NCBI RefSeq assembly: GCF_018977255.1 | Contig: NW_024704771.1 | Span: 868,001 to 932,000, forward strand | Direction: 5' to 3' | Length of the DNA: 64,000 bases | DNA from: Callorhinchus milii | Taxonomy: Eukaryota | Shown: in pieces, positions 521-50,909 of the stretch | How positions within the stretch are numbered: the stretch's first letter is position 1 | Layout of the letters: every line of letters begins with the position of its first letter | Translations under genes and position numbers: made by a program | Notes under the pieces: model-generated | The model's database searches: none | Told to the model about the DNA's origin: nothing | The model's input: the letters and a program-made list of their open reading frames with translations, nothing else

Positions 521-700
521 AGTGTATTGCAGATTAATTGGCCATTCACTTGATGGTGCAAATGACTGTAACCTTAGCCTTCAAAAGCAGTCACTACAAA
601 TGACTAATTAGGTGTAAAGTACTGAATGTTTTGATTTGATCAATTGTTACAAAAGTTCTGCCTTTGTAATTGTTGATAACACAATGTATTACTGTTACAG

Positions 701-976
701 ACCGCAGACGGCTGCCCTTGATTTCCATGGCAGGTTACCAGGACTCGAGAATTAAACTCACGTGTAAATCAAAAGGCTGGTATCCCGAACCTCGTGTAGT
801 TTGGTTTGATAGGAGTGGAGCAGAGGTGAAAGCCAAGACTGAAACATGCACTCAGAGGTCTGAAGACTGTTGGAAATGTGAAAGTAGTATTGATATAACC
901 AGCGATTCTACAGACAGATTCACGTGTCTGACAAGAAACTTTCTGGAGGAAAACGAGGCAAAGATCCAGGTATCAG
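701..976 (+). CDS. BTN gene A IgC (C2-set) exon
   Basis: ttacag|ACC...TCAG|gtcagt, 276 nt. Encodes [18 protein letters not shown]...FTCL, the typical BTN IgC motif (C..GWYPEP.V.W). Confidence 0.93.
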
Positions 977-3900
977 GTCAGTGAAACATTTGCAAAAATA
1001 TAAGCACTTCAATGCAACGTATTACAGTTCATATTGTGATGTGGAACAATCCACAGCAGCTCCCAATGTTCAATCTGAGGCTTTCATTCTGATTTTCTTT
1101 CAGCCAATTTCATTATAGGATAGTTTGCTATTGTAATTGCAAATAATTAATTACACAACAACAAGATACATGTGTATAGCGCCTTTCACGTGGGGAGGAC
1201 ATCCCAAGGCACTGGACAGTGACAGCATTTCATGTATTACTGAAATACAGCAGTCCTGTAGCTCAGTGGTTAGAGCACTCACCTCGCAAGCGAGAGACCT
1301 GAGCTCGATTGTCGGAGACGCTGTCCTTCAGATGAGACGTTGAACCGAGGACTTTTCTGCTCCTGTTCAGGTGGATTTTAAAGATCCTCTGACACTTTTC
1401 ATGAAGGGAAAGAAGTTTCTCCAGGTATCCTGGCCTACAATCCTGCAGATAAATTTGTCATTCACTACATAACTGTTGGTGGACATTGTGTGCAGAAAAT
1501 TGGCTGCCATGTTAGCATACAAATAAACAGTCACTACATATCACTGTAATGCCTGTGAAACGCTTTGAGACTTCATGAAAATGTAATAAGGTTCTATATC
1601 AAATTAAAGAATGAAAGGATTATTATTAAATATGATACAAAATGTTCCTTATGTTACAGAGGTGTTTTTCCACCGAGGCCCAGACTGGCTGGTGGTTTTC
1701 CTTGTGGCGTTCACTCTTGTGCTTGGAGCAGTTGGTGTGTTGATGTTCTTCTGCAGAAAACGATTGAAAAAAGTTAAAGGTAATAAATGATTTTGAGATT
1801 CCCCCAAAATATAATCTTTACTTTCGTCTTTTATATAATCCATAACATAGTGAGGAGAGCACTGGCAACGTCTTAGTGGCAGTGACAAAGGCGAGAATGA
1901 GGGTTTCCGAGGTGTTGGGTGTGAGGTAGGGGCAGCGGCCGTTGATGTGATGGGTGTGAATTAAGGCAGTTTTGATGAGGCAATGCATGTGAGGGAGAAA
2001 GGAAAGCTGGGGATCAAACCACATGCCATGGTTGTCACTGAGAGAATTAGAGAGAGAGGCCGGGGAGGCTGAGGAGGTCAGAGCCAGAAGAGAGGATGTG
2101 TTGGCAGGAGCCAAAGGTGATGGCTTTAGTTTTATCAAAACAAACAAATTGAGACAGATCTTGAAGGAGGCATGAGAGGGGGTGAGATGATATGGAGTTC
2201 CAGAGGGTGGGGGCAGAGAGGCTGAAGGCTCGCCACCAATGTTTGGGTGGGCAAAGCACGGAATATGAAGCAGGCTTGAGGATGCTGAGTAGAGGGAGCG
2301 GACAGGTAGGTAGGAGGTTAGGAGGTTCAGAGGTAGGGAGTCGCAAAGCCGAGGAGGTGAGGTGAGGATCAGGAGCTTGAACTGTCTCCTCTGAGGCATG
2401 CGGAGCCGGGCGATCATGAGGTTGATAGTGTCGCGGTGCCTGGTGCAGGAGAGGACACAGACTTCAGATTTCTGGACAATCTGCAGCCTGTGGAGGAAGG
2501 AGTTGTGGAGGCCGACAAGCAGGGAGTTTGTGTAGTTGAGCCTGGATGTGATGAACGTGTGAATAAGGGTCTCGAGAGAAGTGGCAGAGCCGGGCAATGT
2601 TGCGGAGGTGAGGAAAAGCGAAGCGGGTCATGGCAACGATATGGGGGATGAAGGACTGTTGAGAGATGAGCAGGACACTGAGGTTCCACTTTGGCTCCAT
2701 GATGTGTAGAGGGCAGCCATAAAGGGTGATGCTGTCAGCGCCCGAGTTATGGAGGCACTGACAGGAGCAATGCAGGACGGCCTTGGTCAACTGGAGAAAG
2801 TTAGCTCTCATCCAGGACTTGATGTCTGACAGACATTCTGTGAGGACAGCAGCAATCCTGGAGTCGAGGTGGAGAGGTGGAGTTGGGTGTCATCACATAC
2901 ATGTGGGAGTTGACTCCATGTCTATGGATGATGTCACCAAGAGGGATCTATACTGAGTTCGAGGAAATTTTGGCTCATCCAGGCCTTGATATCTCACAAT
3001 CAACTGGACAGATCATCAGGGACCTGGGGTCGAGAGTAAATTTTGGGTCATCCACATCCATGTGGGAATTAAGTCCATGTCTGTGGATGATGTTGAGGGA
3101 CAGGGTGACTGTGTTGGCCAGTAGTGGGCAGAGGAAGGGCAATTGGTTGGTGAGCAGATGGGGGGGAGGTTGTTGAGGGAGCAGGTGGGGAGGTTTATGT
3201 TATGAGAAGGAAGATGTGGCCGGGTGTATTTTGTTGATTTTTGTTGTTGAATGTGAAAGGCGCAATATAAATGTCATTTTATTGTTATTATTCTCTATTG
3301 TCTCTCACACATAAAGAGAAGTTGTGGGATAAAAGGCTGGAAATGTTAATCAGAATGTGTCTTGTCGTTTCCAAACTGCAGAAGGATTTGCTCACACAGA
3401 GGGATATGAAGATGTGGAATTCTTTGCCCCAGAAATCTGTGGAGAAGGAATCAATGTGAATGTTTAAATTTAAACAAATAAATTCAGATGGATCTTGAAG
3501 GAGGCATGAGAAGGGGTGAGGTGGGATGGAGTTCCAGAGGGTGGGGCCAGAGAGGCTGAAGGCTCGCCCACCAATGTTGGGGTGAGCAAAGCAGGGAACA
3601 TGAAGCAGGCCGGAGGATGCTGAGTGGAGGGAGCGACAGGTTGGTAGGAGTTTAGGAGGTCACAGAGGTAGGGAGGAGCAAAGCGGAGGAGGTGAAGTGA
3701 AGATCAGGAGCTTGAACTGTATCATTTGAGTCATGTGGAGCCGGGGGATGAAGGTCTGTTAAGAGACGAACAGGACACTGAGCTTCCACATTGGCTCCAT
3801 GATGTGTAGAGTGCAGCCATGAAGGGTGATGCTGTCAGTGCATGAGTTATGAGGCCACTGAGCAATGCAGGACGGCCTTGGTCAACTGGAGAAAGTTAGA

Positions 3901-6900
3901 TCTCATCCAGGACTGACAGACATTCTATGAGGACAGCAGTGATCCTGGAGTCGAGGTGGAGTTTGGTGTCATCACATATATGTGGGAGTTGACTCCATGT
4001 CTATGGATGATGTCACCAAGAGGGATCTATACTGAGTTGGAGGAAATTTCGGCTCATCCAGGCCTTGATATCTCACAATCAACTGGACAGATCATCAGGG
4101 ACCTGCAGTCGAGAGTAGATTTGGGGCCATCCACATCCATGTGGGAATTAAGTCATGTTTAAATGAGAGACAGAGACTTGGATAGTAGAAATATTAATGG
4201 CTTTGGGTAAAGAGCAGGGAGTAGGGTTAAAAATATTAAAATTGGTGGAACAGGCTCGTTGGCTGAATTGTCTCCTTCTGTTCCCCTTTTCCTTTCCGAA
4301 AAGCTGATTTCAATTAGAAATAACCTTAAAGCAGAGTCTTTAATGCACTATTATTTTCACTAATATTTAATAAAATATTGTATTAACATTTCTGCTGGAT
4401 TGTGTCCATTACATTTAGGGGAAACGTCCTACAGTTACTGATAAGGACGACACTAACGATTGTGTCTTTCTTTTCCAGTTTATGAAAATCTAAAAAAGGG
4501 ATTTAAAAATCTGGGTAAGTAACAACATTACAAACATCCCCGAGCCTCAGCCTCCCCGAGAGTCAGGTCCTCGGAGACCTGCCACAAGCCCTTCCTGTGC
4601 TCACTGGTGACCTCAGCATTTACATATACACACACACCCAGACATATACACACACATACCCAGACATATACAGACAACAAGCACACACACACACAGACAT
4701 ATGCACACAACACACACACACAGAATCACAGAACAACCTGAACTAAACCCACCTCCTATGGAATAAAGAAACGTGACAATTCTGTGCAGATGAGGAGAAT
4801 CTCACTGTGTTTGACTGGAGAGAGAAAGTGAAACTTACACTTTAACACAAATTAAATCATTCTGATACAATGAATGAATTAAAAAACATGATGTGAACGA
4901 GTCTCTGAATGTGCATTCCATTCGGTTAGATTCTGTTCCAAAATATTGAACATTTACATCTGCGACTTGAAACAATTTACATTGATACAATGCCTCCATG
5001 CGCCGGGTCAGGGTGAAAGGGGAGGTGACCGTACACACGGTTAAAGAGGAAGGTCTTCAGGTGCGATGAAAAAAAAGAGTGGGGAGTGAGATGGAGGGAT
5101 TGAGACAGGGAGTTCTGTGTGTTTGGTGGTAAGTGGTTGAAGACATGGCCACCAATGGTGGGGCGGAGGGGAGTCAGGGATGAGCAGAAAGCCAGAGCCG
5201 CCCAAATAAAGGGGTGGGTAGAGGAGTGGGGTGTGAGCAGGTCGGAGAGGTAGGGAGGTGCTGGACATGAGGTGATTTGTCAGTGAGTGTGAGGATCTTG
5301 AAATGGATCTGTTCAGTGATAGGGAGCCGGTGGAGCCCGGCAAGGGCTGGAGTGACGGGGTTTGGAGTTTGTTGTGGGTAATGTACCAAATGTTAAGGAT
5401 TATTAATATTATCATTATTCACTTTTTGAGATTGTAAATGTTTAATCAGTTTTGTCAGTTTCTACAGTGCCAAAAATCCCCATTCTTAATGTGAATTATA
5501 ACACAAATTGTGAAATAATTTGGTTTGTTTACTGATTTTATTTCCTTCATTTGATGTGAGCACGTATCCTCCTATCACAGTGAGTTTGGAAAGTTTGAGC
5601 TTAAAGGAAAATAAAGAAACTGAATAAAATAAACCAGATAAGTTTGTTAACTTTTTTTCAAAAATTTAAAATTATATTTTCTAAAACCTTTTCTTTTGTT
5701 TTAAAGATAATGAACTGAAATCTGCCAAACAAGGTACAGTACATTGTGTTATTGGCACTAAGTGTTTATGATGGAATTCCATCAGTGATGATGTCCCATA
5801 AGTGAATCAATCAATGACGACTGACTTCAACATTCAAACCGTCTTCACTCAATGACTTTCAGTCTCGTGAGAAACTTTACATTGCTTATTAATATTTGTT
5901 TCTTCCTTTAGACCAAAAATACATGAAAAAAACACTGGGTAAGTTTTAATCTCCTGGAGCGTGAAATAAGTTTCCTTCTCATCGCGCCTCCCCTTGTTTT
6001 AACCGGATGATTCTGGGAAGGGTCAGTGGGAAAGGGGGTTAGTGAGAACTTTGGATAATGATAAGCTGTGAGGTTTCAGCAGGAAAAACATGAGCAATTC
6101 CCCTCAATCCATCCTCTGTGGACCACAAGCCTTGCTTCTGGACAACCCATGTCTAAACATTAGTAAACCCGGGAGCATGGCGCTGGGGAGAGGGTTCATT
6201 CTGTATCAGACAGACACGGAAACTCTACACACAGTTTGTGGAACTCCGAATAGTTTGGTTTGGAGACTCTTAACCCCAGTGATGGGTTTGTGTGTGTGTC
6301 AGACTCTGACCAAAACTAAGTCCATGTGTTTTTTTTAATTGGTGAAAACAAACTCTGATTGGGATTTGGTGAGATCCTGAAGCCTCAGTGCTGAAGGGTT
6401 GTTTATCAGCTGAATCACAAGACTGTGAATAGGTTCAGTGTGTAACAGTGGGGGGTGATTTGTGGAAATAAACAATCAATAAATATATTGTTTCCTTTCA
6501 GAACTGNAAAAACAATTCACCAAATCAGGTACTTGATGGCTTTATCCTCATTTACTGTTGTTGATGTTATTGATGTAGAATTGTGCTGCTGCTCAAAGGA
6601 TCAATTATTATCAACTCTGATAAAGATAATAAATTAAATGTAAGAAATACGATTATATTAAGATTATAAGCAAAGTTTGACGTGAACTTTCAATGTACAG
6701 TTCAGTCATCTCACATCTACAAATGTGATCAGTTTGTCAGACCCTGTAACCTGGAGAGATCTGAACCCAGATATTGAGTTACATCGATAGATTACAGTAG
6801 AACAGAAGAAATGCTGGAGGNAAAAAGCCCAATATCCATCTAGTTTGCCTTCCACCTTCATGGCAGTCACATGCAAATATGTCCCAAACTACCTGTGTAC

Positions 6901-9900
6901 TATATCCCATAACGTTATTTCCTAAAAGAACATTTCTAATCTGTGTTTGAAAGAATCTACTCAATAATAATAATCCTTGCATTTGATATAGTGCTTTTCA
7001 CATCTTCTAGACGTCTCAAAGCGCTTCACACAATGTACAGTAAAGTGAATTTACTGTATATTTGTGAGCGAAATGCTGCAGTCAATTATGTACAGCAGCG
7101 TCCCACAAACAGTCGAGGATTGAAGTGACCAATTTATTATTATTTTCCTTTCTAGAGGGATTATTATCAGGTGTGTGGAGTAAGGAAACTTGCCCATGGT
7201 TTTTCCCTGTGGGAATTGAACCCAGGTTTCTCGCTTGCAAGGGGAGTGCTCCAACCACTGAGCTACAGGACTCCACAGTGTCATTGGTGAGATCATCCTC
7301 TAAGTACAGACTCACCAATGACCTACAAAGTGACCCGATTACCCCACTATTTCCACTTCCTATTGATCTTTTGATACATCCCAACAACAGATTGTCAGGA
7401 ATAACATACATTGAAGTTTACAAAAGATGAAATTATAAGCAAAATCTTATTAAATTAAAACTTCTGTTTCCTTCCAGAGTGGGAGATCGTTGGCAGTTGT
7501 AAATGTAAGTTACCCCACATTACAGGCTGGTTATACACCCCACATTACAGGCTGGTTATACACCCCACATTACAGGCTGGTTATACACCCCACATTACAG
7601 GCTGGTTATACACCCCACATTACAGGCTGGTTATACACCCCACATTACAGGCTGGTTATACACCCCACATTACAGGCTGGTTATAGACCCCACATTACAG
7701 GCTGGTTAGAGACTCTGCGTTGTCAGTGTGCGGAGGAAGTTGCTCTAATTGACGATGTGTAGAAATTATCAGCAAAATGCAGATTCATTAAGTGATTAGC
7801 AAAATATCACTCATAACCTAATTTTCAGTCTAGTTTCCAGTTGTGTAAAGTGCACACATCACATTGTAGATGTGCATCCCAATAAATACCGTATGTGTGA
7901 CAGGACGGGGTGGGTGTAGCAGAGACTGTTGTGTCAAGTGGGCTCACCATTGCGAGTTGTGTTAGTGACACCCTGATAATGAGCTCCTGAGCCCAGCTGA
8001 TAAACTTGTGTTTTCTCTCAGGCTGCAAGGATCTTCTCGTGGGGTTTGGTAAGAGACTTGATTTAATACAATGCTTCATCACTTCGTTGAGACGTCGCAA
8101 AGCGCTTCACAGAATATACTGCAAGGAGAATTGACTATATTTTCTGGGCAAATCGCGGCTGCTAATTGCACACAGACAGCAGTGTCCCACAAACAGTCAT
8201 GGATAAATGACCAAATTACTATTTTTGGGGAAGGAATTATTACCCCCAGAAAGGGATCCACTAATCGACTAACGATCGGGTTCCTACTTGCTGCGAGGTA
8301 AACAGAGGCAAGTGGAGTAAGGAAACTTGCCCAACGTTTCACGCTGCCAGGAACCAAACCCAGTTCCTCTCTTTCTTCCAAGGCGAGTGCTCTAACCACT
8401 GAGCTACAGGACTCTGGAATATTAGTGCAATAAAGAAAATGATTGTGTAATGACGCATAAACACAACTGTATAAAACAACCTCAATTGAACAAGTTGATT
8501 CAAACTAAATTTTCTTTCATTTCCAGTCAAGTCCAGAATCCACAGTTATGCAGGTAAGACATTAATATAGTATAAATGACATAATTCAGAACTGCTCAGA
8601 TCCCACCCCAGATTTAGCACAAAGATGTACAGACAGAAGGTCCCAGCCTGGTCTGTGCTGAGGTATCTGATCTCAGTCGGGGAGGGAGGGGGCTCTACAC
8701 ATGGCCTCAGGGCCCGGATATGGATGGACAATCAGCCAAAGTCACTGTTCCTCAAAACATTCAGGGATTCCTCCCCCACTCCCATCCCAGCCTTTCTGTA
8801 AATACCGGGTGAGGAGAGGATCAGGCTGTGAGGCCCTCAATGGTTGAATAACCAACCAACACTGGCTGTCTAGACTCTCACATGAACAAGTCACTTGAGA
8901 GAGCTACAGACTAGAACCAGACACAGTGAGTGTGAGCACTGAGCCCGACTCCTCCTCATCGCCCTCTGCACGGTCACTGAAGCTGTGATGCCATGTTGAG
9001 GTTGTAGAGATGTCAGTCCAATCCTGTGCCCCAGGCGCTGGGCACAACAGCTGTTAGTGTGTGACTGGAGAATGGTATGTGACTGTACCTGTGGAAGGTA
9101 CTGATAGACCAAATACTACATACACTGTTACTGTATTTACTACATTACATGGTGTCGTACACACTGTCACCTGTCGTAAAATACTGACTTTATATTGTGT
9201 GAAGGAATCGGATTACTGACCAATAACAGTCAGTTGTCATGACTGGATGCTCATGTGATGTCCTCGTGTGAGTCCCTCTTGACTCAGAACATCAGTGTGT
9301 TTCAACTAACGATGACCACATTATGGTGACATGGTGTTTGCCCACAGCAAACTCTGATCTTGTTGTCTGATCAGCAGCCCATATATTTATGTATAACTAA
9401 CCCCCCTCCCCCCCGATCAATCAACCTGTCCACTCAGTTTCAAGATCTAGATTAGTCCACATCGTCTCTCCCAGAGGGACACCGCACCCAAATCACACCC
9501 AGACCTCACCTACGCCATACACAGATCAAACCCAGACCTCACCTACACCAAACCTGTACTACCCAAACCACAACTACACCACACCCAAACCTCACACAGA
9601 CCACACAGGGCACACAGCTACATGTCTTAATGATAACAGCTGACAACATTCTGCTTTCTTACAGGTTACAAGGAGGTTCTCACAGAATTAGGTAAGGTAT
9701 TTGGGTCAGTTTGATAAAGAGCCATTCTGTCACTCCCCTTTCCCCGAATAAATGTTAAAATATATTAATGGGGAGCGGGAGCGAGGAGGGGAATATAAAG
9801 CAGTTTGGGGAACAGAGAAAATGTGACTGGCAAAACCGTATAAAACCATCCTCATCAAATAAATCTATACCAACTGAACTTCCTTTATTTTACAGAAAAG

Positions 9901-12900
9901 ACCCAATTTGGGTTGTACAGAAGTTATGCAGGTAAGATATTTAATATCATATAAAGTGTGAAATTCAGAAATCCTTGACAGACCACAGGGTAACAATCTG
10001 TATCTGCCACCTGTCTACCAACCGTGCGATCCTATCAGTGCACTCTCACAGAGGTAGGAAGGAGCAAAGCCGTTGAAGGTGAAGATGAGATTTTTGAACT
10101 CGTTCCTGTGGAGGATGGGGAGTCAGTGGAGCCGGGCGAGGGTGGGGGTGACAGGGTTTGGGAGAGGACACAAGCTGCAGAATTCTGGATGATACCGCTC
10201 CACAAAGACCCTCACACACACAATCTCACCCTCTCCCACAAAAACATACACGGACATCCCCCACACACATCCTCACCTCCCCCTCCACATACACACACCT
10301 TCACCTGCCCCTCAGACACATCCTGACAAACAACAACTTGGATTTGTATAGTGCCCTCCATACCGGATGGCGTCTCAGAGCGCTTCACAGTAACAGATCC
10401 TGGTGTCAAGTGAGGGGGAAGAAGGTGACCAAAGGCACGGTCAAAAAGAAAGGTCTTTAGCCGAGACCTAAAAGCAGGAAGGGAGGGCACAAGGCGAAGG
10501 GAGTGAGGAAGGGAGTTCCAGAGCCTCAGGGCATAGTGGCTGAAGGCACAGCTGCCAATGGTGGAGCGGAGGAATCGGGGGACAAGGAGGAGGCCAGACC
10601 CGGTGAAGCGAAGGCAACGGGCACTGTTGTGAGGAGAGAGGTCAGAAAGGTCGGGGCAGAGGAGTGGAGGGATTCAAAGACAAGATGGAGGGATCTGGGA
10701 CAGGCAGCCAGTGTTGGTGTCAGTGCTGTTAGTGTTAGTGTTGGTGTCAGTGCTGTTAGTGTTAGTGTTGGTGTCAGTGCTGTTAGTGTTAGTGTTGGTG
10801 TTCAGTGCTGTTAGTGTTAGTGTTGGTGTCAGTGCTGTTAGTGTTGGTGTCAGTGCTGTTAGTGTTAGTGTTGGTGTCAGTGCCGTCAGTGTTAGTGTTG
10901 GTGTCAGTGCTGTTAGTGTTAGTGTTGGTGTCAGTGCTGTTAGTGTTAGTGTTGGTGTCAGTGCTGTTAGTGTGAGTGTTGGTGTCAGTGCTGTTAGTGT
11001 TAGTGTTGGTGTCAGTGCTGTTAGTGTTAGTGTTGGTGTCAGTGCTGTTAGTGTGAGTGTTGGTGTCAGTGCTGTTAGTGTTAGTGTTGGTGTCAGTGCT
11101 GTTAGTGTTAGTGTTGGTGTCAGTGCTGTTAGTGTTAGTGTTGGTGTCAGTGCTGTTAGTGTTGGTGATTCTGTGTTAGTTTTGATTGTTTAATTATGAT
11201 GTGAAGCCGACGTCACTTATTGTAACTCTGCGGTTCCCCTGTGACCCCCTCACGTCGCGGCTTTATACCCACTGCTCGGCCTCGGCTCCGCCCCGCGCTC
11301 TCCTGACTCCACTCCACACCCTCACATCCCCCACAAACACAATCACATCCCCCAACAGACACACCCTCAGCCCCCAACACACACGCTGACACACCGCCCC
11401 ACACACACCCACATCCCCCCCACACATAAACACTCACATCCCCCCAACACAGTCTCACATCACCGCAACACACACCCTCACATCCCCTCCACACACACCA
11501 TCACATTCCCCACCACATACCCACTCATATCCCCCGCCACACATACACCCCCTCACATCCCCCTCACACGCACCCTCACAGCCCCCCACACACGCACGCC
11601 CTCACATCCCTCTCTCACACACAACCTCTCCACACAACCTCTCATCCCCCCAAACATACACCCTCACATCCCCACCGCACCTACATCCTCACATTCTCTG
11701 ACCACATACATCCTCACATCCCCCCCTAACACATACACACTCATATCCCCCGCCCACACACACACACCCTCACATCCCCCCACAGACACACACTCTGCCC
11801 CACAAACACACACCCTTGCATCCCCCTCACACACACCGTTACATCTCCCCACATGCACCCTCACATCCCCCTATAAGCACTCTCACATCCTCCCCACACA
11901 CCCACACCTCCCCCACACACTCATACACCCCCCACCACATACACACCCTCATACCACCCCCAGATACACACCGTCACATCCACCCCCAAACACACCATCA
12001 CATCCCCCCAACACAGACTCACACCAACCCCCAAACACACAACCTCACATCTCCCCCCACACAGACACCTTCACATCCGTCCTGAAACACATCATCACAG
12101 ACGCCCCCACACAGCCACAGTCCCCCCACACAGACTTTCACATCCCCCCCACACACAAACACTCACATCCCCCAACACAGTCTCACACCACTCCAACACA
12201 CACCCTCACATCCCCTCCACACATACACACACACACATCACCCACACACACACACACATCACCCACACACACACACACTCATATCTCCCATCCACGCATA
12301 CACACCTTCACATCCCTTCAACTCAGCCTCACACCACCACCCCACACATACACACCCTCACTTCCCCCACATACAAACCCTCACATTCCCCACACACACG
12401 CTAACATTCCCCCCACATGCACCCTCGCATTCCCCCACACGTACCCTCACCCCCCCAACACACACCCTCACACTGCCCCCCTATACACACCCTCACATGG
12501 CACCCCCACATGCACCCTCACATCACCCGCCACACACACCCTCAAATACGCCCACCCAAACAACCCTCACATCCCTCCCACGGACGCACCCTCAGCCCCC
12601 CGATACATACCCTCACACCCCACCCAAATTCACATCCCCCACACACGCTCACATCCTCTCCACACACCCTCACATCCACCCAACACAGACTCACACCAAC
12701 CCCCAAACGCACAACCTCACATTTCCCCCACACACACCTTCACATCCGACCCGAAACAGACCGTCACAGCCCCAAACACTCTGACATTCCCACATACTCA
12801 CACCTTCACCTTCCCCCCCACACACCCTTACGTCCCCCCCTCACACACCCTCACGTCCCCCCCTTCACACACCCTCACATCCCCCCCCACACACACCCAC

Positions 12901-13597
12901 ACATTCCCCCCCACACAAACCCCTCCCCCACAGACACACAGACTCTCAGCCTTTTTGCGGATTCTGTTCCCAGGAGATGTCGATGTTTTACACAAAGGCT
13001 TCTCTCCCGGTGACGACGCTGAAGATCATCTTATTTATGATTGTAAAGGTGTCCGACAATAATGGTCTGATTCTCCCTCCAGTTACAGTCACTCTGGATC
13101 CTGACACAGCCCATCCCCGGCTCATCCTGTCTGAGGACCTGACCAGTGTGAGACGCGGAGACGAACTGCAGTCGCTCCCTGACTCCCCGAAGAGGTTTAG
13201 TAACTATCCCATTGTCCTGGGATCTGAGGGCTTCACATCGGGGAGACATTACTGGGAGGTGCAGGTGGGCAACAAGTCATGGTGGGCTGTGGGATTGGCC
13301 ACAGAGTCTGTCAACAGGAAACAAGCAATCACATTGTCACCAGAGGATGGGGTCTGGGGGGTGAGGCTGGTGGGTGGGGACTGTTATGAGGCTCTGACAT
13401 CACCCCGCACCCGCCTGTCCCTGACAGTGAGACCCGGGAAGGTCGGGGTTTACATGGACTATGAGGAGGGACAGGTGTCATTTTACAACGCTGACAACAT
13501 GTCTCATCTCCACACTTTCACCCAAACTTTCACTGAGAAACTTTATCCTCTGTTCAATCCCTGGTTTGGTTCTGACCCTCTGACAATCTGTCGGTGA
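701..13597 (+). CDS. Butyrophilin-like gene A, 5'-partial gene model (IgC-TM-8 mini-exons-B30.2); signal and IgV exons lie upstream of the window
   Basis: join(701..976,1660..1779,4479..4514,5912..5938,6502..6528,7478..7504,8022..8048,8527..8553,9665..9691,9896..9931,13083..13597). All exons have ag/gt ends and phase 1, and the frame is open to the TGA. The domain order is the canonical BTN architecture. Confidence 0.88.
1255..1440 (+). mobile_element. SINE fragment: tRNA-like head joined to a Deu-like core
   Basis: TAGCTCAGTGGTTAGAGCA A-box, then gtccttcagatgagacgttgaaccgagg...aggtggattttaaagatcc. Confidence 0.6.
1660..1779 (+). CDS. BTN gene A transmembrane exon
   Basis: ttacag|AGG...AAAG|gtaat, 120 nt. 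Encodes [40 protein letters not shown] (hydrophobic helix followed by a basic stop-transfer). Confidence 0.92.
1850..3200 (-). mobile_element. L2-clade LINE fragments (RT C-terminal region)
   Basis: Minus-strand peptides [23 protein letters not shown] and [11 protein letters not shown] match the intact L2 RT at 52641-53978. Confidence 0.85.
3490..4150 (-). mobile_element. L2 fragment, internally deleted tandem duplicate of ~2155-3070
   Basis: Near-identical blocks (e.g. gatctatactgagtt..gaggaaattt.ggctcatccagg); paralogous ORFs at 2877 and 3956. Confidence 0.8.
4479..4514 (+). CDS. BTN gene A cytoplasmic mini-exon 1 (36 nt, [12 protein letters not shown])
   Basis: Polypyrimidine tract + ccag acceptor, gtaagt donor, phase 1-1. 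Confidence 0.8.
5045..5385 (-). mobile_element. L2 3' fragment
   Basis: Minus-strand peptide [26 protein letters not shown]. Confidence 0.75.
5912..5938 (+). CDS. BTN gene A mini-exon 2 (27 nt, DQKYMKKTL)
   Basis: tttcttcctttag acceptor, gtaagt donor, phase 1-1. Confidence 0.8.
6502..6528 (+). CDS. BTN gene A mini-exon 3 (27 nt, ELXKQFTKS; one N base)
   Basis: tttcctttcag acceptor, AG|gtact donor (weaker), 27 nt, phase 1-1. Confidence 0.68.
6963..7274 (-). mobile_element. tRNA-Ala-derived SINE with L2-type tail
   Basis: Reverse complement has an A box, a TGC anticodon loop and a GGTTCAATTCCC B box; tail gaagcgctttgagacgtc...(att)n. Confidence 0.85.
7478..7504 (+). CDS. BTN gene A mini-exon 4 (27 nt, EWEIVGSCK)
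   Basis: ctgtttccttccag acceptor, gtaagt donor, phase 1-1. Confidence 0.75.
7512..7708. repeat. 25-bp tandem repeat (caccccacattacaggctggttata), ~8 copies
   Basis: Direct inspection; it starts immediately after the mini-exon 4 donor. Confidence 0.95.
8022..8048 (+). CDS. BTN gene A mini-exon 5 (27 nt, CCKDLLVGF)
   Basis: gttttctctcag acceptor, gtaaga donor, phase 1-1. Confidence 0.7.
8057..8414 (-). mobile_element. tRNA-derived SINE, same family as 6963-7274
   Basis: ctctaaccactgagctacaggact head on the reverse strand, plus the shared body and tail. Confidence 0.82.
8527..8553 (+). CDS. BTN gene A mini-exon 6 (27 nt, VKSRIHSYA)
   Basis: ttttctttcatttccag acceptor, CAG|gtaaga donor. It ends in ..YA, like the pre-B30.2 exons at 9896 and 39151. 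Confidence 0.8.
9665..9691 (+). CDS. BTN gene A mini-exon 7 (27 nt, GYKEVLTEL)
   Basis: ctttcttacag acceptor, gtaagg donor, phase 1-1. Confidence 0.78.
   Translation, partial: VTRRFSQN
9896..9931 (+). CDS. BTN gene A mini-exon 8 (36 nt, [12 protein letters not shown])
   Basis: cctttattttacag acceptor, CAG|gtaaga donor, in frame with the B30.2 exon. Confidence 0.8.
10040..10710 (-). mobile_element. L2 3'-end fragments, interrupted by C/A-rich sequence
   Basis: Minus-strand peptide [21 protein letters not shown]; tail ...gcactatacaaatccaagttgttg. Confidence 0.75.
10711..11166. repeat. 27-bp tandem repeat (gtgttagtgttggtgtcagtgctgtta), ~17 copies
   Basis: Direct inspection; it produces the spurious (VSAVSVSVG)n ORFs. 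Confidence 0.95.
11290..12930. repeat. C/A-rich degenerate satellite (cacaccctcacatccccc-like) in the last intron of gene A
   Basis: G-poor + strand with a recurring ccctcacatcccc unit; same family as 39200-50110. Confidence 0.92.
13083..13597 (+). CDS. BTN gene A terminal B30.2 (PRY-SPRY) exon
   Basis: ctccctccag acceptor. Encodes [19 protein letters not shown]...[14 protein letters not shown]...[16 protein letters not shown]...FTEKLYPLF, ending in TGA. Confidence 0.96.
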
Positions 13598-14343
13598 CGG
13601 TTAATGAGGAGGAAAATTTGACTATTATTTCCATGAGGTTTGGATAGTGCCGAGTGTTTGATTCTGTACTTCTCTCTCAGGTTTGAGCTGAGTTTGTGAC
13701 GGGAAGTGAAGGACGGGGCTGAGTGGGGTATCCCTGAGAGACGTCAGCTCCACATTGTATCCCGAACCGGGAAAGCCGTCTGTGGTCAGCGACACTGAGC
13801 TGCTGACACTGACACTGTGCCACAACACCGCACCTGCACATTCCAGTGTCAATACAGTAAACCCCGACTTACAGGACTCCGGGTGTCCGGGATACACAAC
13901 TGGACCAACCGGGATCCACAACAAATATAGTTGTAAAATTTCCGTGAGCCCTCCCTGTGCAGCGTCCCACAGGGTCAGCTCTCCTGTCACACTGAGCAGC
14001 CGCACCGTCCTCACTGGCCTTCACGCTCTGAGACAGGGATATATATCGCTGATATCTTTCTCTCCAGCAATGCCCAGTCTCACAGTCGGGGCTGTGCTCA
14101 GAATCTCACTGAAATCTCCCAAATCACTTTTATATCTATAAACAGGTGCCGTGTTGTTCCCCAGTGAGCGGCCGAGTATCACTGTGTATAAACACTGTGT
14201 ATTTTCAGTGACAGCTTTTATAATCCGTAACATTTCTCACTCACTGTAACAATCTTTAACCCTCACTAAACCGAGGTCACGTCTGTGTGGATATTAATAT
14301 CCAAAATATTGTCATTCACTTACAAAATACTCGAACAATTTAC

Positions 14344-14349
14344 AATAAA
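14344..14349 (+). terminator. Candidate polyadenylation signal of gene A
   Basis: AATAAA followed by a T/GT-rich stretch, at the same position in the 3' module as in the copies at 51742 and 59656. Confidence 0.5.
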
Positions 14350-14418
14350 TTTGTTTTGATATTATTTTATGTCGAATGATTGAACACAATCTGCACACAC
14401 TCCTCATTCTCTGATACA

Positions 14419-14700
14419 CACTCTAACCCTCACCCCGATACACACACCCTAACCCTCACCCCGATACACACACCCTTACCCTCACCCCCTGATACACACA
14501 CCCCTAACCCTCACCCCATGATACACACACCATTGACCCTCACCCCGACACACACACACCCCTAACCCTCACCCCCTGACACACACCCCTAACCCTCACC
14601 CCCTGACTCACACACCCCTAACCCTCACCCCCTGATACACACACCCTATCCCTCACCCCCCGATACACATACCCCTAAACCCTCACCCCCTGACACACAC
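14419..14700. repeat. ~29-bp tandem repeat (ccctaaccctcaccccctgatacacacac)
   Basis: About 9 degenerate copies, just past the gene A polyA signal. Confidence 0.85.
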
Positions 14701-14797
14701 CAAGAGCAACAAATTATATTTTCATAGCGCATTTCACGTCAGGACATCTCAAGGGGCTGTGATGTTAGGAATGCCAACCCGAGCTGGTGGTTGGGAT

Positions 14798-16678: not shown

Positions 16679-16823
16679 TAATAATCGTTGCATTTGATTT
16701 AGCACTTCACAGATTTGAGGCGTCTCAAAGTGCTTCACAGGATATAATGTAAAGTCAATTGACTGAAAAATAAAATATTTAAACTCCCACAGTAACACTT
16801 TATTACAGACACAGAAATACATT

Positions 16824-34185: not shown

Positions 34186-34243
34186 ATGAGCTGCAAACAC
34201 TGTATTCAGGTCCTGTGGCTTGTGCTTCCCCTCTCACTGACTG
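34186..34243 (+). CDS. BTN gene B signal-peptide exon ([19 protein letters not shown])
   Basis: Acceptor aaccag at 34156, GAAGATGA start, G|gtaagg donor, 58 coding nt. Confidence 0.88.
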
Positions 34244-37200
34244 GTAAGGAAACACATTGAATCTGTTTGATTTCTGTTGGTGTAAATTGCTGAAGATAAA
34301 GGTAAATGATGTGCACAGACTGGTTGCCGCCTTCCCTCCACAAAATACACAGTCGCAGCACTTCACAGTCTATCCTATGAAGATTTTGAGACTTCTCGGC
34401 GACGTGATAATCATAGAATAATCAGAAAATCATAGAATTATACAGCACAAAAGGAGGCCATTCAGCCCAGTAGGCCAACTCTTTTAAAAGTGCCATCCAA
34501 ATCAATCCCAATCCCTTGCTCTTTCCTCATAGCCGCGCAAACCTGTCCTTCACAAATAATTATTTATAAGGTGCTATATCAAATGTAAGGATTATTATTG
34601 TTATCTCAGCAACAGTCTATTGACAGAGTTTGTCTGAGGCAGTGACTGAAAATCCTATCTGTATCCATTGTTTATTATTAAGCAGAGAAATTCACAGTCA
34701 CTGGCCCGGCCCTCCCTGTCCCAGCCATTGCTGGTTCAGATGTTGTCCTGGACTGTAAGTGTTCCATAGACCTGCCACGAGAGGGTGTGGAGGTGAGATG
34801 GTTCAGGACAAGATACGACTCCCCTGTGCACTTATACAAGGAGGGGCGACAGCAACTGGAAACACAGGATGAAGCCTACAGACACAGAACACAACTGTTT
34901 GTAGAGGAATTTATCAACGGCGATGTGTCTCTCAGACTGGGAGATGTGCGGGTGTCAGATAATGGAGCGTACACGTGTTTTGTTGACTATGCCGGATGGT
35001 ATGAAGAGGCAGTGATAGAGTTGAAAGTTATAGGTCAGTAATGTTTATAATTCATTTTATTTCATGTAATCTGTGTGTACAAACATTCATTATTTGTTAA
35101 TGTTATCTTCAAAATGCAATACTTTATAAAAACAAGAACAAGTTATCATTGGTGTAAATGTATTCAGAATGTTGTGGCCTTCAGTAAAGTTACTGCTCTG
35201 TAATGTCCCGGGTATTAATATTGTCTGATTCACGTCTCCTGTCTTCCAGTTCTTGGCAGTCAGCCTTGGATTCACGTTGATGGGCAGCACAGTGATGGTG
35301 TGAGGCTGCGGTGTGAATCCAGTGGATGGTTCCCAGCACCAGAGGTTCTGTGGTTTGATGATCAGGGAAACAACTTAACAACACTCAGTAACTGGACGGT
35401 CAGAGAGGATTCTAAAGGTCTCTTCAGTGTTAAAGGCCAAATAGAAATCATCCATTCAACCAATAAGATCAGGTGTCTGATTCACAATTCAGAAAATGAA
35501 CAAGAAGGCAAACTCCAAATCTCAGGTCAGTAAGTACACTGAAATATTAACAATAGACTGATAGATATGATGCAGATTTGTACAGCACATGAAGTGAAAA
35601 CGATCAGTCTGGATGATACGGTCCACCTGATTTCATCCTTTCAAAATACCAAACTCACCATCTTCAACAACAGCAACAAATGACATTTGTGAAGTGCCTT
35701 TCATGTCAGGAGGACATCCAGTGTGAGAGGCACTATGCAAAGGTGGTGGACAATCAGGGATTTGGACCCACCTGGGGATTGGGGTCAACATGTGGATGGA
35801 GTTTCACAGAATTGGGGCAGAAGTATGGAGTTAGTAGGCCACAGAGATAGGGAGAAGCCGGGCCATGGAGGGCTTTGAAGGCAATGAACCTATTCATTAC
35901 AACAACAAGATTACATTTGTATAGCACAAATGTAATTTGTTTTACTTGACAATAAAGGTTTGAGATTCATCCAGAAATCACATTTGTAAACTGAAATAGA
36001 TAGATATTAGGAATGATTTCCTTTCCTCTGGCATGGTAATTCTCATTCAAAAATGCTGCCGTTACTTCTTCTCAATAAACTTTCACTAAACTCTTTACAA
36101 ACAGGGCTGCTGCCCCATTTCCAACCTGCCCTTCCTCTCCAAGGTGCTGGAATGAGTTGTCGCCTTGAAGTTCAATTCCTTCCTTTCCCACTATTCCCTG
36201 TATAAGTCTTTCCAAACTGCTTCCTGCTGCTCACAGCATCATTACAGCCCTGGCCAAAGGCACAGGTGATGTTCTCTCTGTCTTTGACCAGGAGACCCTG
36301 TGTCTACTTGTCCTTCTCTATCTCTCGCTCACCTTTCACACTGTTGACCACTTCTCCTCCGTGAATCACCTCACAGATTCTGCACATTATTGGTTTCACT
36401 CCTGTCTGTCCCAGCATCTCCATGTTATCTTATTCAATGGCTTCTCCTCCTGCCCAGTGTATTCACAGATGGTGTTCCTCTCCTTTTCCTTATCCACACA
36501 TTCACCCTTGGAGTCTGGCTCTCAGGGACCGGACTAACGAGACAGCCACAAAGAATGGATTTTATTCTGACATTCCCTTACCAACCACATCACTTTGGTG
36601 CCACTTCAGCTCCAAGACTCCATTTATCTCCTGGGAAAAGTATATGAAAATAATAATCCTTGTATTTGATACTGTATGTTATCATGTATTTGAGATGTCT
36701 CAAAGCCCTTCACAGAATATACTGTAAAGTGAAATGAATGTATATTTTGTGGGTGAGACGCGGCAGCCAATTGCAGACAGCAGTGTCCCACAAACAGTCA
36801 CGGATTGAGTGATCAAATTATTATTATTCTATTGTATTATTTGATGGGATTATTAGCTCTGGAAAGCGATCTACCAATCAATGAACAAGCGGGTTCCTAC
36901 TTACTGCTGGGTAAGCAGAGGCATGTGGAGTTTAAACATTAAACTTGTCTAATGTTTCGTTCTGCCCCGGAATCTAACCCGAATCTTCTCGCACTACACT
37001 ACCAGGACTTCACTTGGAGTGAAGCCTGTGACAGCTACTGAGCTACTGTGTGTAACACAGTCACATGGGGACAAATAAAGGTATTTGTGTTTGACATCAG
37101 AATAGATGTTTAAATGTCTATTTACATTTCTTGACAGACGAGTTCTTTCCCAAAGTGCCAGTGGGTTTGGTGGTTTCCGCACTGCTCTTAGGACTTGCCA

Positions 37201-40200
37201 TATTGGTGCTGAGTGTTCTTGTCGGCTTCAGTGTAAAACAGCGCCGAGAGATCAAAGGTACGTTCCCATCAGTAACATCTCCCATCACAACACTGTTTGT
37301 GTAAGAATGTGCAAGTTCTATAAAACAATTGGTCCCTCCCTTCACTCAGTGACCCCCGCGGCCTGTTTCATGTCACCGCCTGATCCTCCCTCCCCACCAT
37401 CAGCAGCTCAGGCTTTCAGCCTCTCTGCCCCCACTCTCTGCAACTCAAGCCAAGAATCCTTCCGACTTCACCCCCTCCCTCTCCATCACCTCTTTCAAGG
37501 CCTGTCCCATGACCTTCCTCATTCTGCATTTTTATTTAATTTTACCCTCTCCCCCCCACCCCAACCCCAGCTCAGACCCCAGCTCAGACCCCAGGTCAGC
37601 CCCCAGCTCAGACCCCAGCTCAGACCCCAGCTCAGACCCCAGTCAGCATTGTGAGGGCTTTGGGATATCCCAGCTCAGATCCCAGCTCAGAGCCCAGTCA
37701 GCTGTGGAAGGTGCTGTGTAAATGTAAATGTTATTGTAATTCAAACCTCCTGTAATTGTGTTGAGCTGCACTTTGTGTAGTTTCTAACTGTTAATGTTGT
37801 AAACATATAGACTGAGCATTAAACAATACTGGATTCAGGAGCGGTTTCTAACAGTTTTGTTTTGTATCCTCCAGATCTTGAGAAGAGAGTGGGTAAGTCA
37901 TCAAAATAAAATAACAATTTCACGTTGTGATTAACCTCATTCACAAGCTTCACACAAAGCAGACATAGTTCATAGAATCATAGAATTGAACAGCACAAAA
38001 GGAGGCCATTCGGCCCATAGAGTCTGTGTCGGCTCTTTGAAAAGAGCAATGTAATGTCAGTCCCACTCCCCAGCCCTTTCCCCATAACCCGCAAACCCGT
38101 CCTCCTCAAATACCATCCACTGCGTTTTTAAAAGTTGTTATCAAATCAGCCTCGACCGCCCTCTCAGGCGATGCCTTCCAGATCCAATGAGATTAATCCC
38201 GGCCTCTCCAGCCTTTCCTCATAATCAAGGGTTCCCTCATTCCGCAGTTGGCTCTATCCTTCTCACTGTGTACCACCCTATCTAACTTTGTGTCGTCGCA
38301 AACTTGGAAATGGTGCTTGTTATACCCAAGTCCAGATCATTTATGTTATAGTTTGCCAACAAAATACACAGTCACTACACTCTCCAGTAAATCGTGCAAA
38401 ATGCTTATGAGGAGCCAAATCTATTTCAAGGATTATTATTATAGAATAACAACAACTTGCACTTATATAGTGCCCTCCACGCAGGATAGCGTCTCAGATC
38501 ACTGAACAGAGACAGAGCCTGATTCTGAGCCGGGCCGAGGGTGGGGGGGGGGGGGGGGGGGGATGGGGGAGCCGACTATAAGCACAGTCGAAAAGGAAGG
38601 TTTTCAGGTGGGATTTGATAAAGAGGAGAGAGGGGGCAAGGCAGAGGGTTTGAGGGAGAGTGTTCCAGAGTTTCGGGGCGTAGTGACTGAATACACGATT
38701 TCCAATGGTGGAGCGGAGGGCAGTAGACAGGGAAGTAGACAGGTGTATGAGGGATAGAGACTTGAAGGGGTTAATGATAGGGCGGGGCAGCTGTTGTTAA
38801 CACTTTGCTCTGAGAGCCCATATAGACTCGATGGTGAATGGCCTCCTTCTGGGCTGTAAATTTCAATGATTCTATTCCATGAATTATTACAGAGTGTTTA
38901 ACTCCAAACATTGGTCTGTTTCACAGCTTCAACTTTCCCTTTTCCTTCCTCAGACAACATTGGCTTATGAACACACACACATTGAGGGAGAGAGAGAATG
39001 AGTGAGTGTCTCTATAACACAGGGAGTGAGTCAATGAGGGCGGGAGGGAGGGAGTGAGGAGGAGAGTGAGGGAGTGAGAGAAGGAGGGAGGGAGTGTGAC
39101 TGAGTTAGGAGCTGACGAAGGTCTGATCACTTCTTTCTTCTTGATTCCAGGGTTGAAAAGGAAGAACACATATGCAGGTAAGATTCTGAGTGACCAAGAA
39201 ACCATCCCACACATATACATACCCTCACCCCACATCCACTGCCCCCCCACCCAACACACACACCCCACACACATAACCACATATCCCCCAACAAACATAC
39301 CCACACATCCCCCACACGCACACCCTCACATCCCCCCACACAGCCCCTCGCATCCCCCCACACACCCCTCACATCCCTTCATACACACACCTTGTCAGCA
39401 GCCCCATGCACACCCTGACATTCCCTCACACAAACACACTCATCTCCCCCCAAACACAACCTCACCCCCACACACCCTCGCATTCCATTACACACACACC
39501 CTCACATCCCCCCCACACACACCCCTCACATGCCCCCCACCCCACCCCCACACATCCTCAAATCCTCCACACACAACCTCATATCCCCACACTCTCACGT
39601 TCCCCACACAAACCCTCACATCCCCCACACACAACCTCATATCCATCACACGCGCATTCCCTCACAATCCACCTCCCACACACACCCTGAAAAGCCCCCC
39701 ACACACACACACACTCTCACATCCCACCCACACCCCCTTCACACCCCTCCATACACACACTCACATCCCCCCACAAACACCCTCAAACACATAGCCTCAC
39801 ATCCTCCCATAGACTTTCTCAAATTACCCCCCACACACATCCTCACATTGACCCCAACCAACCTCATATTAACCCATACACCCCTCACACTCCCCCCACA
39901 CCACACCCTAAAATTCGCCCCCACACACAGCCTGTCATCCCCCACCCCACACATAAACACTGTCACATCTGCCCGACACGCACACACCCTCATATCCACC
40001 CACACACACCCTCACATCCCCTCAAACACACTCACCCTCACATCCCCCCCACATACAGTACCCTCACATTACCCCCACACACATCCTCACATCCCACCCA
40101 CACACACCCTCATATCCACCCGACACACACTGTCAAATCCCCCCCAAACATAACACAACATGTGGGAGCAGGAGGAGGCCATTCGGCCCTTCGAGCCTGC

Positions 40201-50771: not shown

Positions 50772-50909
50772 CGGTTAATGAGGAGGAAAATTAGTCCATT
50801 ATAATGAGGAGCAAAAACCCTCAGCCATTAACTTGATACATTGGGGGTGAAAATATTCTTGGGGGGAGTGGGGGGGAGGGTGTGCACTTTAAAATGGGCA
50901 TCACCCCGA

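What the first reader, a model, noticed from the sequence alone, without database searches (positions are those of the whole stretch)
12895..13618. ~720-bp homogenised tract around B30.2 while the ectodomains are deeply diverged
Seen: identity with ~50069-50792 starts at the edge of the C/A satellite. The ~140 intronic nt before the acceptor differ at only about two positions, and identity ends ~20 nt after the stop codon. In contrast, the IgC exons of A and B share only about one third of residues by eye, and the TM and mini-exons barely align. Inference: the signalling exon was recently gene-converted or swapped between old paralogs, so ectodomain and B30.2 evolve as independent modules.
Basis: partly seen in the sequence, partly recalled or inferred. 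Interest (0 to 1): 0.7.

Follow-up and report, generated by a model that had tools for sequence, protein, structure and literature searches.

The report
Shared B30.2 exon cassette, shark butyrophilins
Two elephant-shark butyrophilin immune genes with very different outer domains carry almost the same last exon, which encodes the intracellular B30.2 sensor domain, because recombination keeps passing this exon between genes of the cluster; this is a real but already familiar way for immune gene families to evolve.

Summary
Window 12892-13618 and 50069-50792 are 95% identical over 727 nt. The 191 intronic nt hold 4 differences. The exon holds about 30 substitutions plus one in-frame 3-nt indel. 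The 21 nt after the stop are identical, and homology then breaks. The IgC exons of the same two genes share 35% of residues, with synonymous sites saturated (dS about 2.2, against 0.02 in B30.2).

- Gene B belongs to a family of at least five "B-type" genes of Callorhinchus milii that all carry this B30.2 type. For B against its paralog P0165, tract divergence (4.0%) equals gene-body divergence (4.7%).
- The deeply diverged "A-type" genes (A and its paralog A2) carry the same cassette.
- IgC and B30.2 trees are incongruent.
- Across five copies the tract is a mosaic: 79 of 120 site pairs fail the four-gamete test, Rm is at least 8, and a PHI-like test gives p=0.009.
- Arrays of one 22-nt C/A satellite flank the cassette.
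- A TRIM gene shares only the exon body.
- Amino-acid changes exceed silent ones (pN/pS 0.7-4.3) and fall at ligand-pocket positions, but this is not statistically firm.

This is a new member of a known kind. Earlier reports of this scan describe the same phenomenon on other DNA of this genome.

The parts
700..976 (+). Gene A (A-type butyrophilin), IgC exon. The start is approximate, and the IgV exon lies upstream of the window.
   Evidence: Pfam C2-set_3 E=9e-22. 94% identical to the A2 IgC exon in L001 and 35% identical to B.
1650..1778 (+). Gene A transmembrane exon (approximate limits).
   Evidence: Hydrophobic stretch. 90% identical to the N-terminus of P0016.
4478..9930 (+). Gene A cytoplasmic linker region holding several mini-exons. 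Only 4478-4513 and 9895-9930 were verified here.
   Evidence: tblastn of RefSeq model P0016 gives 100% matches of 12 aa at each of the two mini-exons.
11315..12922 (+). 22-23-nt C/A-rich satellite in the last intron of gene A.
   Evidence: TRF: period 23, 69 copies.
12892..13082 (+). Conserved 3' end of the last intron of gene A, the intronic part of the shared tract.
   Evidence: 4 of 191 nt differ from B and 2 of 191 from A2. Also homologous in L003, L004 and L005, but not in L002 or in TRIM locus L006.
13083..13597 (+). Gene A B30.2 (PRY/SPRY) terminal coding exon, stop codon included.
   Evidence: Pfam PRY 5e-25 and SPRY 1e-26. The acceptor cag|TT is in phase 1. Best solved relative is the human BTN3A1 B30.2 domain, E=2e-52.
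13598..13618 (+). First 21 nt of the 3'UTR, the end of the A/B identity.
   Evidence: 0 of 21 nt differ from B, and alignment fails after 13618-13628.
14022..14700 (+). Repeated 3'UTR element downstream of A. It is also present after B, after the TRIM relics and in L001, L004 and L005.
   Evidence: 6.1% mismatch to B 51420-51848. Copies are listed.
34186..34243 (+). Gene B (B-type butyrophilin) leader exon.
   Evidence: tblastn with P0165 and P0156 residues 1-21. Donor seen.
34683..35033 (+). Gene B IgV exon.
   Evidence: ORF. 84% identical to P0165. Splice sites seen.
35250..35525 (+). Gene B IgC exon.
   Evidence: 96% identical to P0165 and 35% identical to A. Splice sites seen.
37138..37257 (+). 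Gene B transmembrane exon.
37875..37892 (+). Gene B mini-exon 1 (18 nt, phase 1-1).
   Evidence: 99% identical to the region around the P0165 mini-exon. AG and GT are intact.
39151..39177 (+). Gene B mini-exon 2 (27 nt, phase 1-1).
   Evidence: Homologous to the second mini-exon of P0165. AG and GT are intact.
41816..50093 (+). 8.3-kb C/A satellite in the last intron of gene B. A first block lies at about 39200-40150 and a LINE fragment at 40147-41800.
   Evidence: TRF: period 22-23, 368 copies. Variant profile.
50069..50259 (+). Conserved 3' end of the last intron of gene B.
50260..50771 (+). Gene B B30.2 terminal coding exon, stop codon included.
   Evidence: Pfam PRY 3e-24 and SPRY 7.5e-24.
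50772..50921 (+). Post-stop sequence of B. Only the first 21-31 nt are homologous to A.
   Evidence: 5.4% mismatch to A2; 93.5% identity to L001 32878-33029. B3 and B4 are seen aligned only over the first ~30-40 nt after the stop.
50922..51376 (+). Second array of the same satellite downstream of the B cassette.
   Evidence: TRF: period 23, 17 copies. P0165 has the same layout at L004 18024-18379.

Best explanation
The window lies in the butyrophilin/TRIM cluster of Callorhinchus milii, scaffold MU249860.1. It holds an A-type butyrophilin gene (A) and a B-type gene (B). Their ectodomain, transmembrane and linker exons are old paralogs.

Their last exon is one shared cassette: the last ~190 nt of intron, the B30.2 exon and the first ~21 nt of 3'UTR. 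This cassette is the normal terminal exon of the young tandem B-type family. A-type genes carry it too, and probably acquired it.

Inferred mechanism: non-allelic homologous recombination between tandem paralogs. It takes two forms. One is crossover in the long 22-nt C/A satellite that fills the last intron, which swaps whole 3' halves. The other is short gene-conversion tracts inside the cassette.

The result is that ectodomain and B30.2 have separate histories, and the B30.2 exon is a patchwork of variants shared among paralogs. Amino-acid differences concentrate in the loops that form the ligand pocket in human BTN3A1. This suggests relaxed or diversifying selection acting on a sensor surface.

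What is shown: the identity tract, the discordant divergence, the incongruent trees, the mosaic structure and the module combinations. What is inferred: the recombination mechanism, the direction of transfer and the selection.
For: Species and family: the nearest proteins are all C. milii, and the window's own 205-aa ORF is on record on the 4.1-Mb scaffold.

Discordant divergence between A and B: silent divergence in the tract is 1.8-2.1%, against IgC dS of about 2.25.

The B cassette looks native to B-type genes:
- P0165, P0167, P0180 and P0185 pair B-like IgV, IgC and TM with this B30.2.
- B against P0165 shows 4.0% neutral divergence in the tract and 4.7% in 2877 nt of non-coding gene body.

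A-type genes:
- A against A2 differs at 5.6% over 9631 nt of gene body but at 2.4% at neutral tract sites (Fisher p=0.0095).
- Cross-type tract divergence (1.8-4.0%) is no greater than within-type divergence (2.4-4.8%).

Trees:
- IgC gives (A,A2) at 100/100 and a tight B-type clade. B30.2 gives A+P0167 at 89/94 and B+A2 at 84/74.
- The AU test rejects B30.2 of B grouping with that of P0157, whose IgC is ~92% identical to B's (p=7e-78).
- On IgC, the AU test rejects A and A2 grouping with B, P0165 and P0167 (p=0.028).

Mosaic structure: among 16 informative sites, 79 of 120 pairs are incompatible, Rm is at least 8, and the PHI-like permutation test gives p=0.009. A shares patches with P0167 (13166-13172, 13347-13407) and with B (13557-13591).

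Module shuffling:
- A2 has an A-type body but B's satellite variants and about 9 kb of B's downstream sequence at 96-99% identity.
- All four combinations of body type and tail type exist.
- The TRIM gene P0169 shares only 466 nt of exon body, at 91.6%.

Pocket positions: A/B replacements fall at the positions aligned with BTN3A1 W391, K393, R412 and R418 (pocket residues as listed in PMC4303140).
Against: - Only about 330 neutral sites are available per pair. The A-A2 deficit rests mostly on the intron; synonymous divergence alone is 4%, not different from the gene body.
- The AU test does not reject a B30.2 tree that keeps the five B-type genes together without A and A2 (p=0.066).
- pN/pS ranges from 0.7 to 4.3, and the best pair reaches only p=0.05.
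- Homoplasy under selection could mimic some of the mosaic sites.
- Joins across 7-8-kb satellites on an unplaced scaffold could be assembly errors.
- No transcript evidence was examined for A or B themselves.
- Only 5 of probably dozens of cassette copies were compared at the DNA level.
Confidence: 0.7

Rival explanations
1. A single ancient exon capture with no ongoing exchange. One unequal crossover gave the A-type ancestor a B-type 3' end shortly before the recent tandem expansion, and all copies have since diverged independently.
For: Tract and gene-body divergence are equal for B against P0165 (4.0% and 4.7%). A-A2 synonymous divergence (4%) is close to their gene-body value (5.6%).
Against: A and A2 have different tails. 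Their B30.2 exons pair with different B-type genes. Many sites are incompatible and they are spatially clustered. The A-A2 intron shows 2 of 191 differences where about 10 are expected. The TRIM gene shares the exon body only.
Confidence: 0.2
2. An assembly artefact. Chimeric joins or duplicated contigs in a satellite-rich unplaced scaffold create the apparent sharing.
For: Long satellites (1.6-8.3 kb) sit exactly at the junctions. The scaffold is unplaced.
Against: The five copies are all different: 4-8% nonsynonymous divergence, indels and distinct flanks. In gene A only 1.6 kb of satellite separates unique A-type intron from the tract. RefSeq model P0016 splices A-type linker exons to this B30.2 exon.
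Confidence: 0.05
3. No exchange at all. B30.2 is simply under much stronger purifying selection than the fast-evolving ectodomain.
For: B30.2 is the best-conserved domain of the family between species.
Against: Intron and synonymous sites are 98% identical, whereas IgC synonymous sites are saturated. In the tract, nonsynonymous change exceeds synonymous change, the opposite of what constraint predicts.
Confidence: 0.01

Closest known systems
Zebrafish NLR-B30.2 / finTRIM families (Howe et al. 2016, PMC4852459; van der Aa et al. 2009, PMC2657112)
   Same: Gene conversion acts on the B30.2 exon separately from the rest of the gene and across gene groups. It is combined with elevated dN/dS in the hypervariable loops. 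B30.2 exons are shared between different gene families by exon shuffling.
   Different: Here the partners are butyrophilin genes (Ig-TM-B30.2) plus TRIMs in a chimaera. The shared unit includes about 190 nt of intron and is bracketed by satellite arrays. Positive selection is not statistically established here.
Chicken BG (butyrophilin-family) hybrid genes (Salomonsen et al. 2014, PMC4046983)
   Same: In tandem butyrophilin-family genes, the 5' and 3' ends have independent phylogenies. This is explained by unequal crossing-over or deletion that generates hybrid genes.
   Different: BG genes lack B30.2, and their 3' module is a coiled-coil tail plus 3'UTR. The authors saw no homogenisation. Here the swapped module is the B30.2 exon, and short conversion-like patches are also seen.
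Human BTN3A1 B30.2 phosphoantigen sensor (PDB 4N7I, 5ZXK and others; PMC4303140)
   Same: It is the best structural relative (E=2e-52). The fold-defining motifs are conserved, and the variable residues of A and B align with basic pocket positions K393, R412 and R418.
   Different: The shark copies do not keep the basic pocket residues (for example, Y and A stand at the H351 and H378 positions). Phosphoantigen binding is therefore not implied, and the ligand is unknown.

Membership tests
Butyrophilin (BTN/BTNL) gene family | IgV plus IgC (C2-set_3) ectodomain | tested here: met
   The IgC exon of A hits Pfam PF22705 at 9e-22. The IgV and IgC exons of B match C. milii BTN1A1-like proteins at 84-96%. 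The IgV exon of A lies outside the window, but paralog A2 has one.
Butyrophilin (BTN/BTNL) gene family | Single transmembrane segment followed by a short-exon cytoplasmic linker | tested here: met
   Hydrophobic exons at 1650-1778 and 37138-37257. Phase-1 mini-exons.
Butyrophilin (BTN/BTNL) gene family | C-terminal B30.2 (PRY/SPRY) domain encoded by one terminal exon | tested here: met
   Pfam PRY and SPRY, E from 1e-24 to 1e-26, in both genes.
Interlocus gene conversion / concerted evolution of one exon | Silent divergence in the tract much lower than in the rest of the same gene pair | tested here: met
   A-B: about 2% against dS 2.25 in IgC. A-A2: 2.4% against 5.6%, p=0.0095. Not met for B against P0165: 4.0% against 4.7%.
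Interlocus gene conversion / concerted evolution of one exon | Incongruent phylogenies of tract and flanking exons | tested here: met
   AU p=7e-78 and p=0.028. One test was not significant (p=0.066).
Interlocus gene conversion / concerted evolution of one exon | Mosaic tracts: spatially clustered, phylogenetically incompatible sites | tested here: met
   79 of 120 pairs incompatible, Rm at least 8, PHI-like p=0.009 on five copies.
Interlocus gene conversion / concerted evolution of one exon | Non-reciprocal transfer with an identified donor and recipient | not testable with these tools
   This needs all cluster copies, and population or outgroup data.
Diversifying selection on B30.2 variable loops (TRIM5 / finTRIM type) | dN/dS significantly above 1 | tested here: inconclusive
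   pN/pS ranges from 0.7 to 4.3 over 10 pairs. For A-B it is 3.2, Fisher p=0.053.
Diversifying selection on B30.2 variable loops (TRIM5 / finTRIM type) | Replacements concentrated in ligand-binding loops | tested here: met
   Replacements cluster at residues 26-35, 68, 83-104 and 110. They align with the BTN3A1 pocket positions W391, K393, R412 and R418.

The most novel reading that the evidence does not exclude
The B30.2 exon may be a satellite-flanked exchange cassette. Same-orientation arrays of one 22-nt C/A satellite on both sides (upstream 1.2-8.3 kb, downstream 0.35-0.45 kb in B, A2 and P0165) would act as portable homology arms. These arms would let otherwise unalignable genes (A-type BTN, B-type BTN, perhaps TRIM) trade sensor domains by recombination. 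That would make it a germline system for reassorting receptor ectodomains with intracellular sensor specificities.
Probability: 0.2. Interest if true: 0.6.

Novelty: new member of a known kind. Interest (0 to 1): 0.36.

Why it matters
In a chimaera, the earliest-branching living jawed-vertebrate lineage, butyrophilin ectodomains and their intracellular B30.2 sensor are already reassorted by recombination. The same B30.2 pool is shared with TRIM genes. This extends a pattern known from zebrafish NLR/finTRIM genes and chicken BG genes to cartilaginous fishes. It also gives a concrete junction to test, a satellite-filled last intron. It does not reveal a new kind of mechanism, and other reports of this scan have already described the same phenomenon elsewhere in this cluster.

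Tried and rejected
- **B as recipient.** My first reading was that B took its B30.2 from the A lineage, because P0157/P0158, with an IgC ~92% identical to B's, carry a distant B30.2. I dropped this after finding four RefSeq B-type genes with B-like ectodomains and this same B30.2 and equal tract and body divergence for B against P0165.
- **Simple crossover inside the exon making A2.** The A=A2 and B=A2 sites are interleaved, not split into two blocks.
- **Shared LINE fragment as proof of common descent.** The fragment lies in the last introns of B and A2 (93.9% identity). I dropped it as evidence because other copies of this element elsewhere are more similar (96-97%).
- **Robust positive selection.** The A-B value of 3.2 does not hold for B-A2 (0.7).
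- **Linker mini-exons of B by tblastn.** The search failed. They were then found through the P0165 locus.
- **Searches not used.** The genome contigs and viral collections were not searched because they hold no vertebrate DNA. A spliced full-length model of gene B was not searched because it has no reference and would have had to be typed.
Full report
**Observation.** A MAFFT alignment of 12595-13918 with 49769-51092, a global pairwise alignment and blastn all show one uninterrupted tract. A 12892-13618 matches B 50069-50792 over 727 against 724 nt at 95.0% identity.
- Upstream of the tract, both sequences are arrays of the same 22-23-nt C/A-rich satellite. The A array is 1.6 kb (11315-12922). 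The B array is 8.3 kb (41816-50093), with an earlier block at about 39200-40150.
- The tract holds 191 nt of intron with 4 differences.
- Its B30.2 exon has 32 substitutions and one in-frame 3-nt indel.
- The 21 nt after the stop codon show no difference, and the alignment then collapses.
- Both exons hit Pfam PRY and SPRY.
- The IgC exons of the two genes (about 700-976 and 35250-35525) share 31 of 88 residues. Their synonymous sites are saturated: pS 0.71, dS about 2.25.
- The TM exons share 13 of 40 residues.

**Source of the DNA.** The closest proteins are all from Callorhinchus milii. The window's own 205-aa ORF (50154-50771) is on record on the 4.1-Mb scaffold MU249860.1 of GCA_018977255.1. 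More than 100 C. milii proteins, with either butyrophilin or TRIM architecture, have a B30.2 at least 69% identical to this one.

**Gene models.**
- Gene A has IgC, TM and a long linker of mini-exons, then the satellite and B30.2. I verified mini-exons 4478-4513 and 9895-9930 against RefSeq model P0016. Its IgV exon lies upstream of the window.
- Gene B appears complete. Its exons are leader 34186-34243, IgV 34683-35033, IgC 35250-35525, TM 37138-37257, two phase-1 mini-exons (37875-37892 and 39151-39177) and B30.2 50260-50771. Splice dinucleotides are intact at the junctions I inspected.
- A and B differ in sequence and in linker exon number.

**Related loci.** I fetched five paralogous loci from the same scaffold.
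- L001 holds A2 (P0016). Its gene body is collinear with A at 5.6% mismatch over 9631 nt.
- L004 (P0165) and L005 (P0167) hold B-type genes collinear with B. Non-coding divergence between B and P0165 is 4.7% over 2877 nt.
- L002 holds P0156, whose homology to the tract starts only at the exon. L003 holds P0033, whose homology includes the intron part.
- P0165, P0167, P0180 and P0185 combine B-like IgV, IgC and TM with this B30.2 type.

**Divergence.** Five tract copies were aligned: A, B, A2, P0165 and P0167.
- Neutral divergence (intron, synonymous sites and 21 nt of UTR) is 1.8-4.8%.
- Cross-type pairs (1.8-4.0%) are no more diverged than within-type pairs (2.4-4.8%).
- For B against P0165, the tract (4.0%) matches the gene body (4.7%; Fisher p=0.58). 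B's cassette therefore looks native to the B-type family.
- For A against A2, the tract (8 of 334 sites, 2.4%) is lower than the body (5.6%; Fisher p=0.0095). The intron alone shows 2 of 187 (p=0.003).
- The intron is not strongly constrained. It differs from the L003 copy at 10.9%, against a synonymous difference of about 17%.

**Phylogenies.**
- IgC tree: (A,A2) has 100/100 support on a stem of 1.05. B, P0165, P0167, P0180, P0185 and P0157 form a tight clade. The A-B path is 1.9.
- B30.2 tree: A pairs with P0167 (89/94) and B with A2 (84/74), inside a seven-member clade with paths of 0.17-0.28. P0157, P0156 and P0152 lie outside that clade.
- In a wider B30.2 tree, the A/B/A2 group nests among TRIM-linked B30.2 domains.
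- AU tests: B with P0157 on B30.2 is rejected (p=7e-78). A and A2 joined to B, P0165 and P0167 on IgC is rejected (p=0.028). Keeping the five B-type genes together without A and A2 on B30.2 is not rejected (p=0.066).

**Mosaic structure.**
- The five copies give 16 parsimony-informative sites. Of 120 site pairs, 79 fail the four-gamete test, and the Hudson-Kaplan Rm is 8.
- Neighbouring sites are more compatible than in permuted orders (PHI-like test, p=0.009).
- Variants that looked unique to A when only B and A2 were compared are shared with P0167 (13166-13172 and 13347-13407). At the 3' end of the exon, A groups with B (13557-13591).
- The TRIM gene P0169 (L006) matches B over only 466 nt of exon body, at 91.6%. 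It shows no homology in the intron or beyond the exon end. This is the signature of a short conversion tract.

**Larger modules.**
- A2 has an A-type body. Downstream of its B30.2 it follows B's downstream sequence (window 51193-59761) at 96-99% identity.
- Its long intronic satellite carries the CpG-containing unit variants typical of B, which A lacks.
- P0165 and P0167 (B-type bodies) continue downstream into sequence collinear with A's tail, 14022-16825.
- All four combinations of body type and tail type therefore exist. This requires recombination between body and tail, which is where the satellite and the cassette sit.
- In B, A2 and P0165, a second array of the same satellite lies 130-200 nt after the cassette. 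In A, a 403-nt segment related to the TRIM-relic 3' region replaces it. This explains why the A/B identity stops about 21 nt after the stop.

**Selection.**
- For A against B, 29 nonsynonymous and 3 synonymous differences give dN/dS of 3.2 (Fisher p=0.053).
- Over ten pairs, pN/pS runs from 0.7 to 4.3. Comparisons with the more distant copies L002 and L003 give 0.5-0.8.
- Replacements cluster at residues 26-35, 68, 83-104 and 110.
- Aligned with human BTN3A1 (E=2e-52), these include the positions of W391, K393, R412 and R418. K393, R412 and R418 are listed as pocket residues in PMC4303140.
- This fits relaxed or diversifying selection on the binding surface, but it is not established.

**Mechanism (inferred).** Tandem paralogs recombine non-allelically. 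Crossovers in the satellite-filled last intron swap whole 3' halves. Short conversion tracts inside the cassette spread and recombine loop variants, and these tracts also involve TRIM genes. The A-type lineage most likely received a B-type cassette. The alternative, long-standing concerted evolution in both types, cannot be excluded.

**Comparison with the literature.**
- Differential gene conversion of B30.2 against the rest of the gene, together with positive selection in the loops, is described for zebrafish NLR-B30.2 genes and finTRIMs (PMC4852459; PMC2657112).
- Hybrid butyrophilin-family genes with independent 5' and 3' histories, produced by unequal crossing-over, are described for chicken BG (PMC4046983).
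- A 2026 phylogenomic survey lists C. milii butyrophilins but does not mention conversion or recombination (PMC12841164).
- Earlier reports of this scan describe the same B30.2 swapping and diversification on other DNA of this scaffold. I re-tested their claims on this window's copies and did not rely on them.

**Limits.**
- There are few neutral sites per pair.
- Five copies were compared out of many in the cluster.
- No read or transcript data were examined.
- Joins across long satellites on an unplaced scaffold remain unverified.

Noticed in passing
window 12977-13597 and 50154-50771: An ATG about 105 nt upstream of the acceptor opens a frame that runs through the intron into B30.2. It is kept in A, B, A2 and P0165 and lost in P0167. 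Public annotations list such B30.2-only proteins (P0162-P0164, P0025). This could be an internal promoter or alternative first exon, or a gene-calling artefact.
   Followed up: partly
window 18312-18755 (+): A TRIM-type first exon (RING plus B-box, Pfam) lies between genes A and B. tblastn found only two B30.2 exons in the window, both assigned to the butyrophilin genes, so this TRIM has no intact B30.2 in the window.
   Followed up: partly
L002 32054-33725; proteins P0157 and P0158: A gene with a B-type IgC (~92% identical to B's in L002; 89% for the P0157 model; its IgV is ~78%) is modelled with a distant B30.2, only 64-67% identical to A/B. This is either another module swap in the opposite direction or a chimeric Ensembl model.
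   Followed up: partly
window 37756-38000 against L004 13400-13644: The region around B's first mini-exon is 99.2% identical to P0165, against a 4.7% background divergence. This may be a second small homogenised patch.
   Followed up: no
window 14022-14700, 23465-23547, 51420-51848, 59305-59741: A 3'UTR element ending in a 29-nt C/A-rich repeat recurs after both B30.2 exons and after the two TRIM-relic copies. It is a second candidate recombination substrate.
   Followed up: partly
window 21737-23547 against 57578-59387: A 1.8-kb duplicate at 95.9% identity (the TRIM last-exon relic region) lies downstream of each butyrophilin gene. A leader-exon copy lies at 57467-57535.
   Followed up: no
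window 10710-11167: A 27-nt minisatellite (17 copies, 94% matches) lies in gene A's last intron just upstream of the C/A satellite. A2 shares it.
   Followed up: no
window 40147-41800 (-) and 52641-53978 (+): LINE reverse-transcriptase sequence is present at both places. The first fragment sits inside B's intronic satellite and belongs to a young family, with copies 96-97% identical in L004 and L005.
   Followed up: partly
window 41816-50093: B's satellite has higher-order domains. Blocks of the CTCACAT unit alternate with CpG-containing CTCACGT/CACGCAC units, and a terminal 0.5-kb block of a 20-nt CTCAGC variant abuts the tract.
   Followed up: partly
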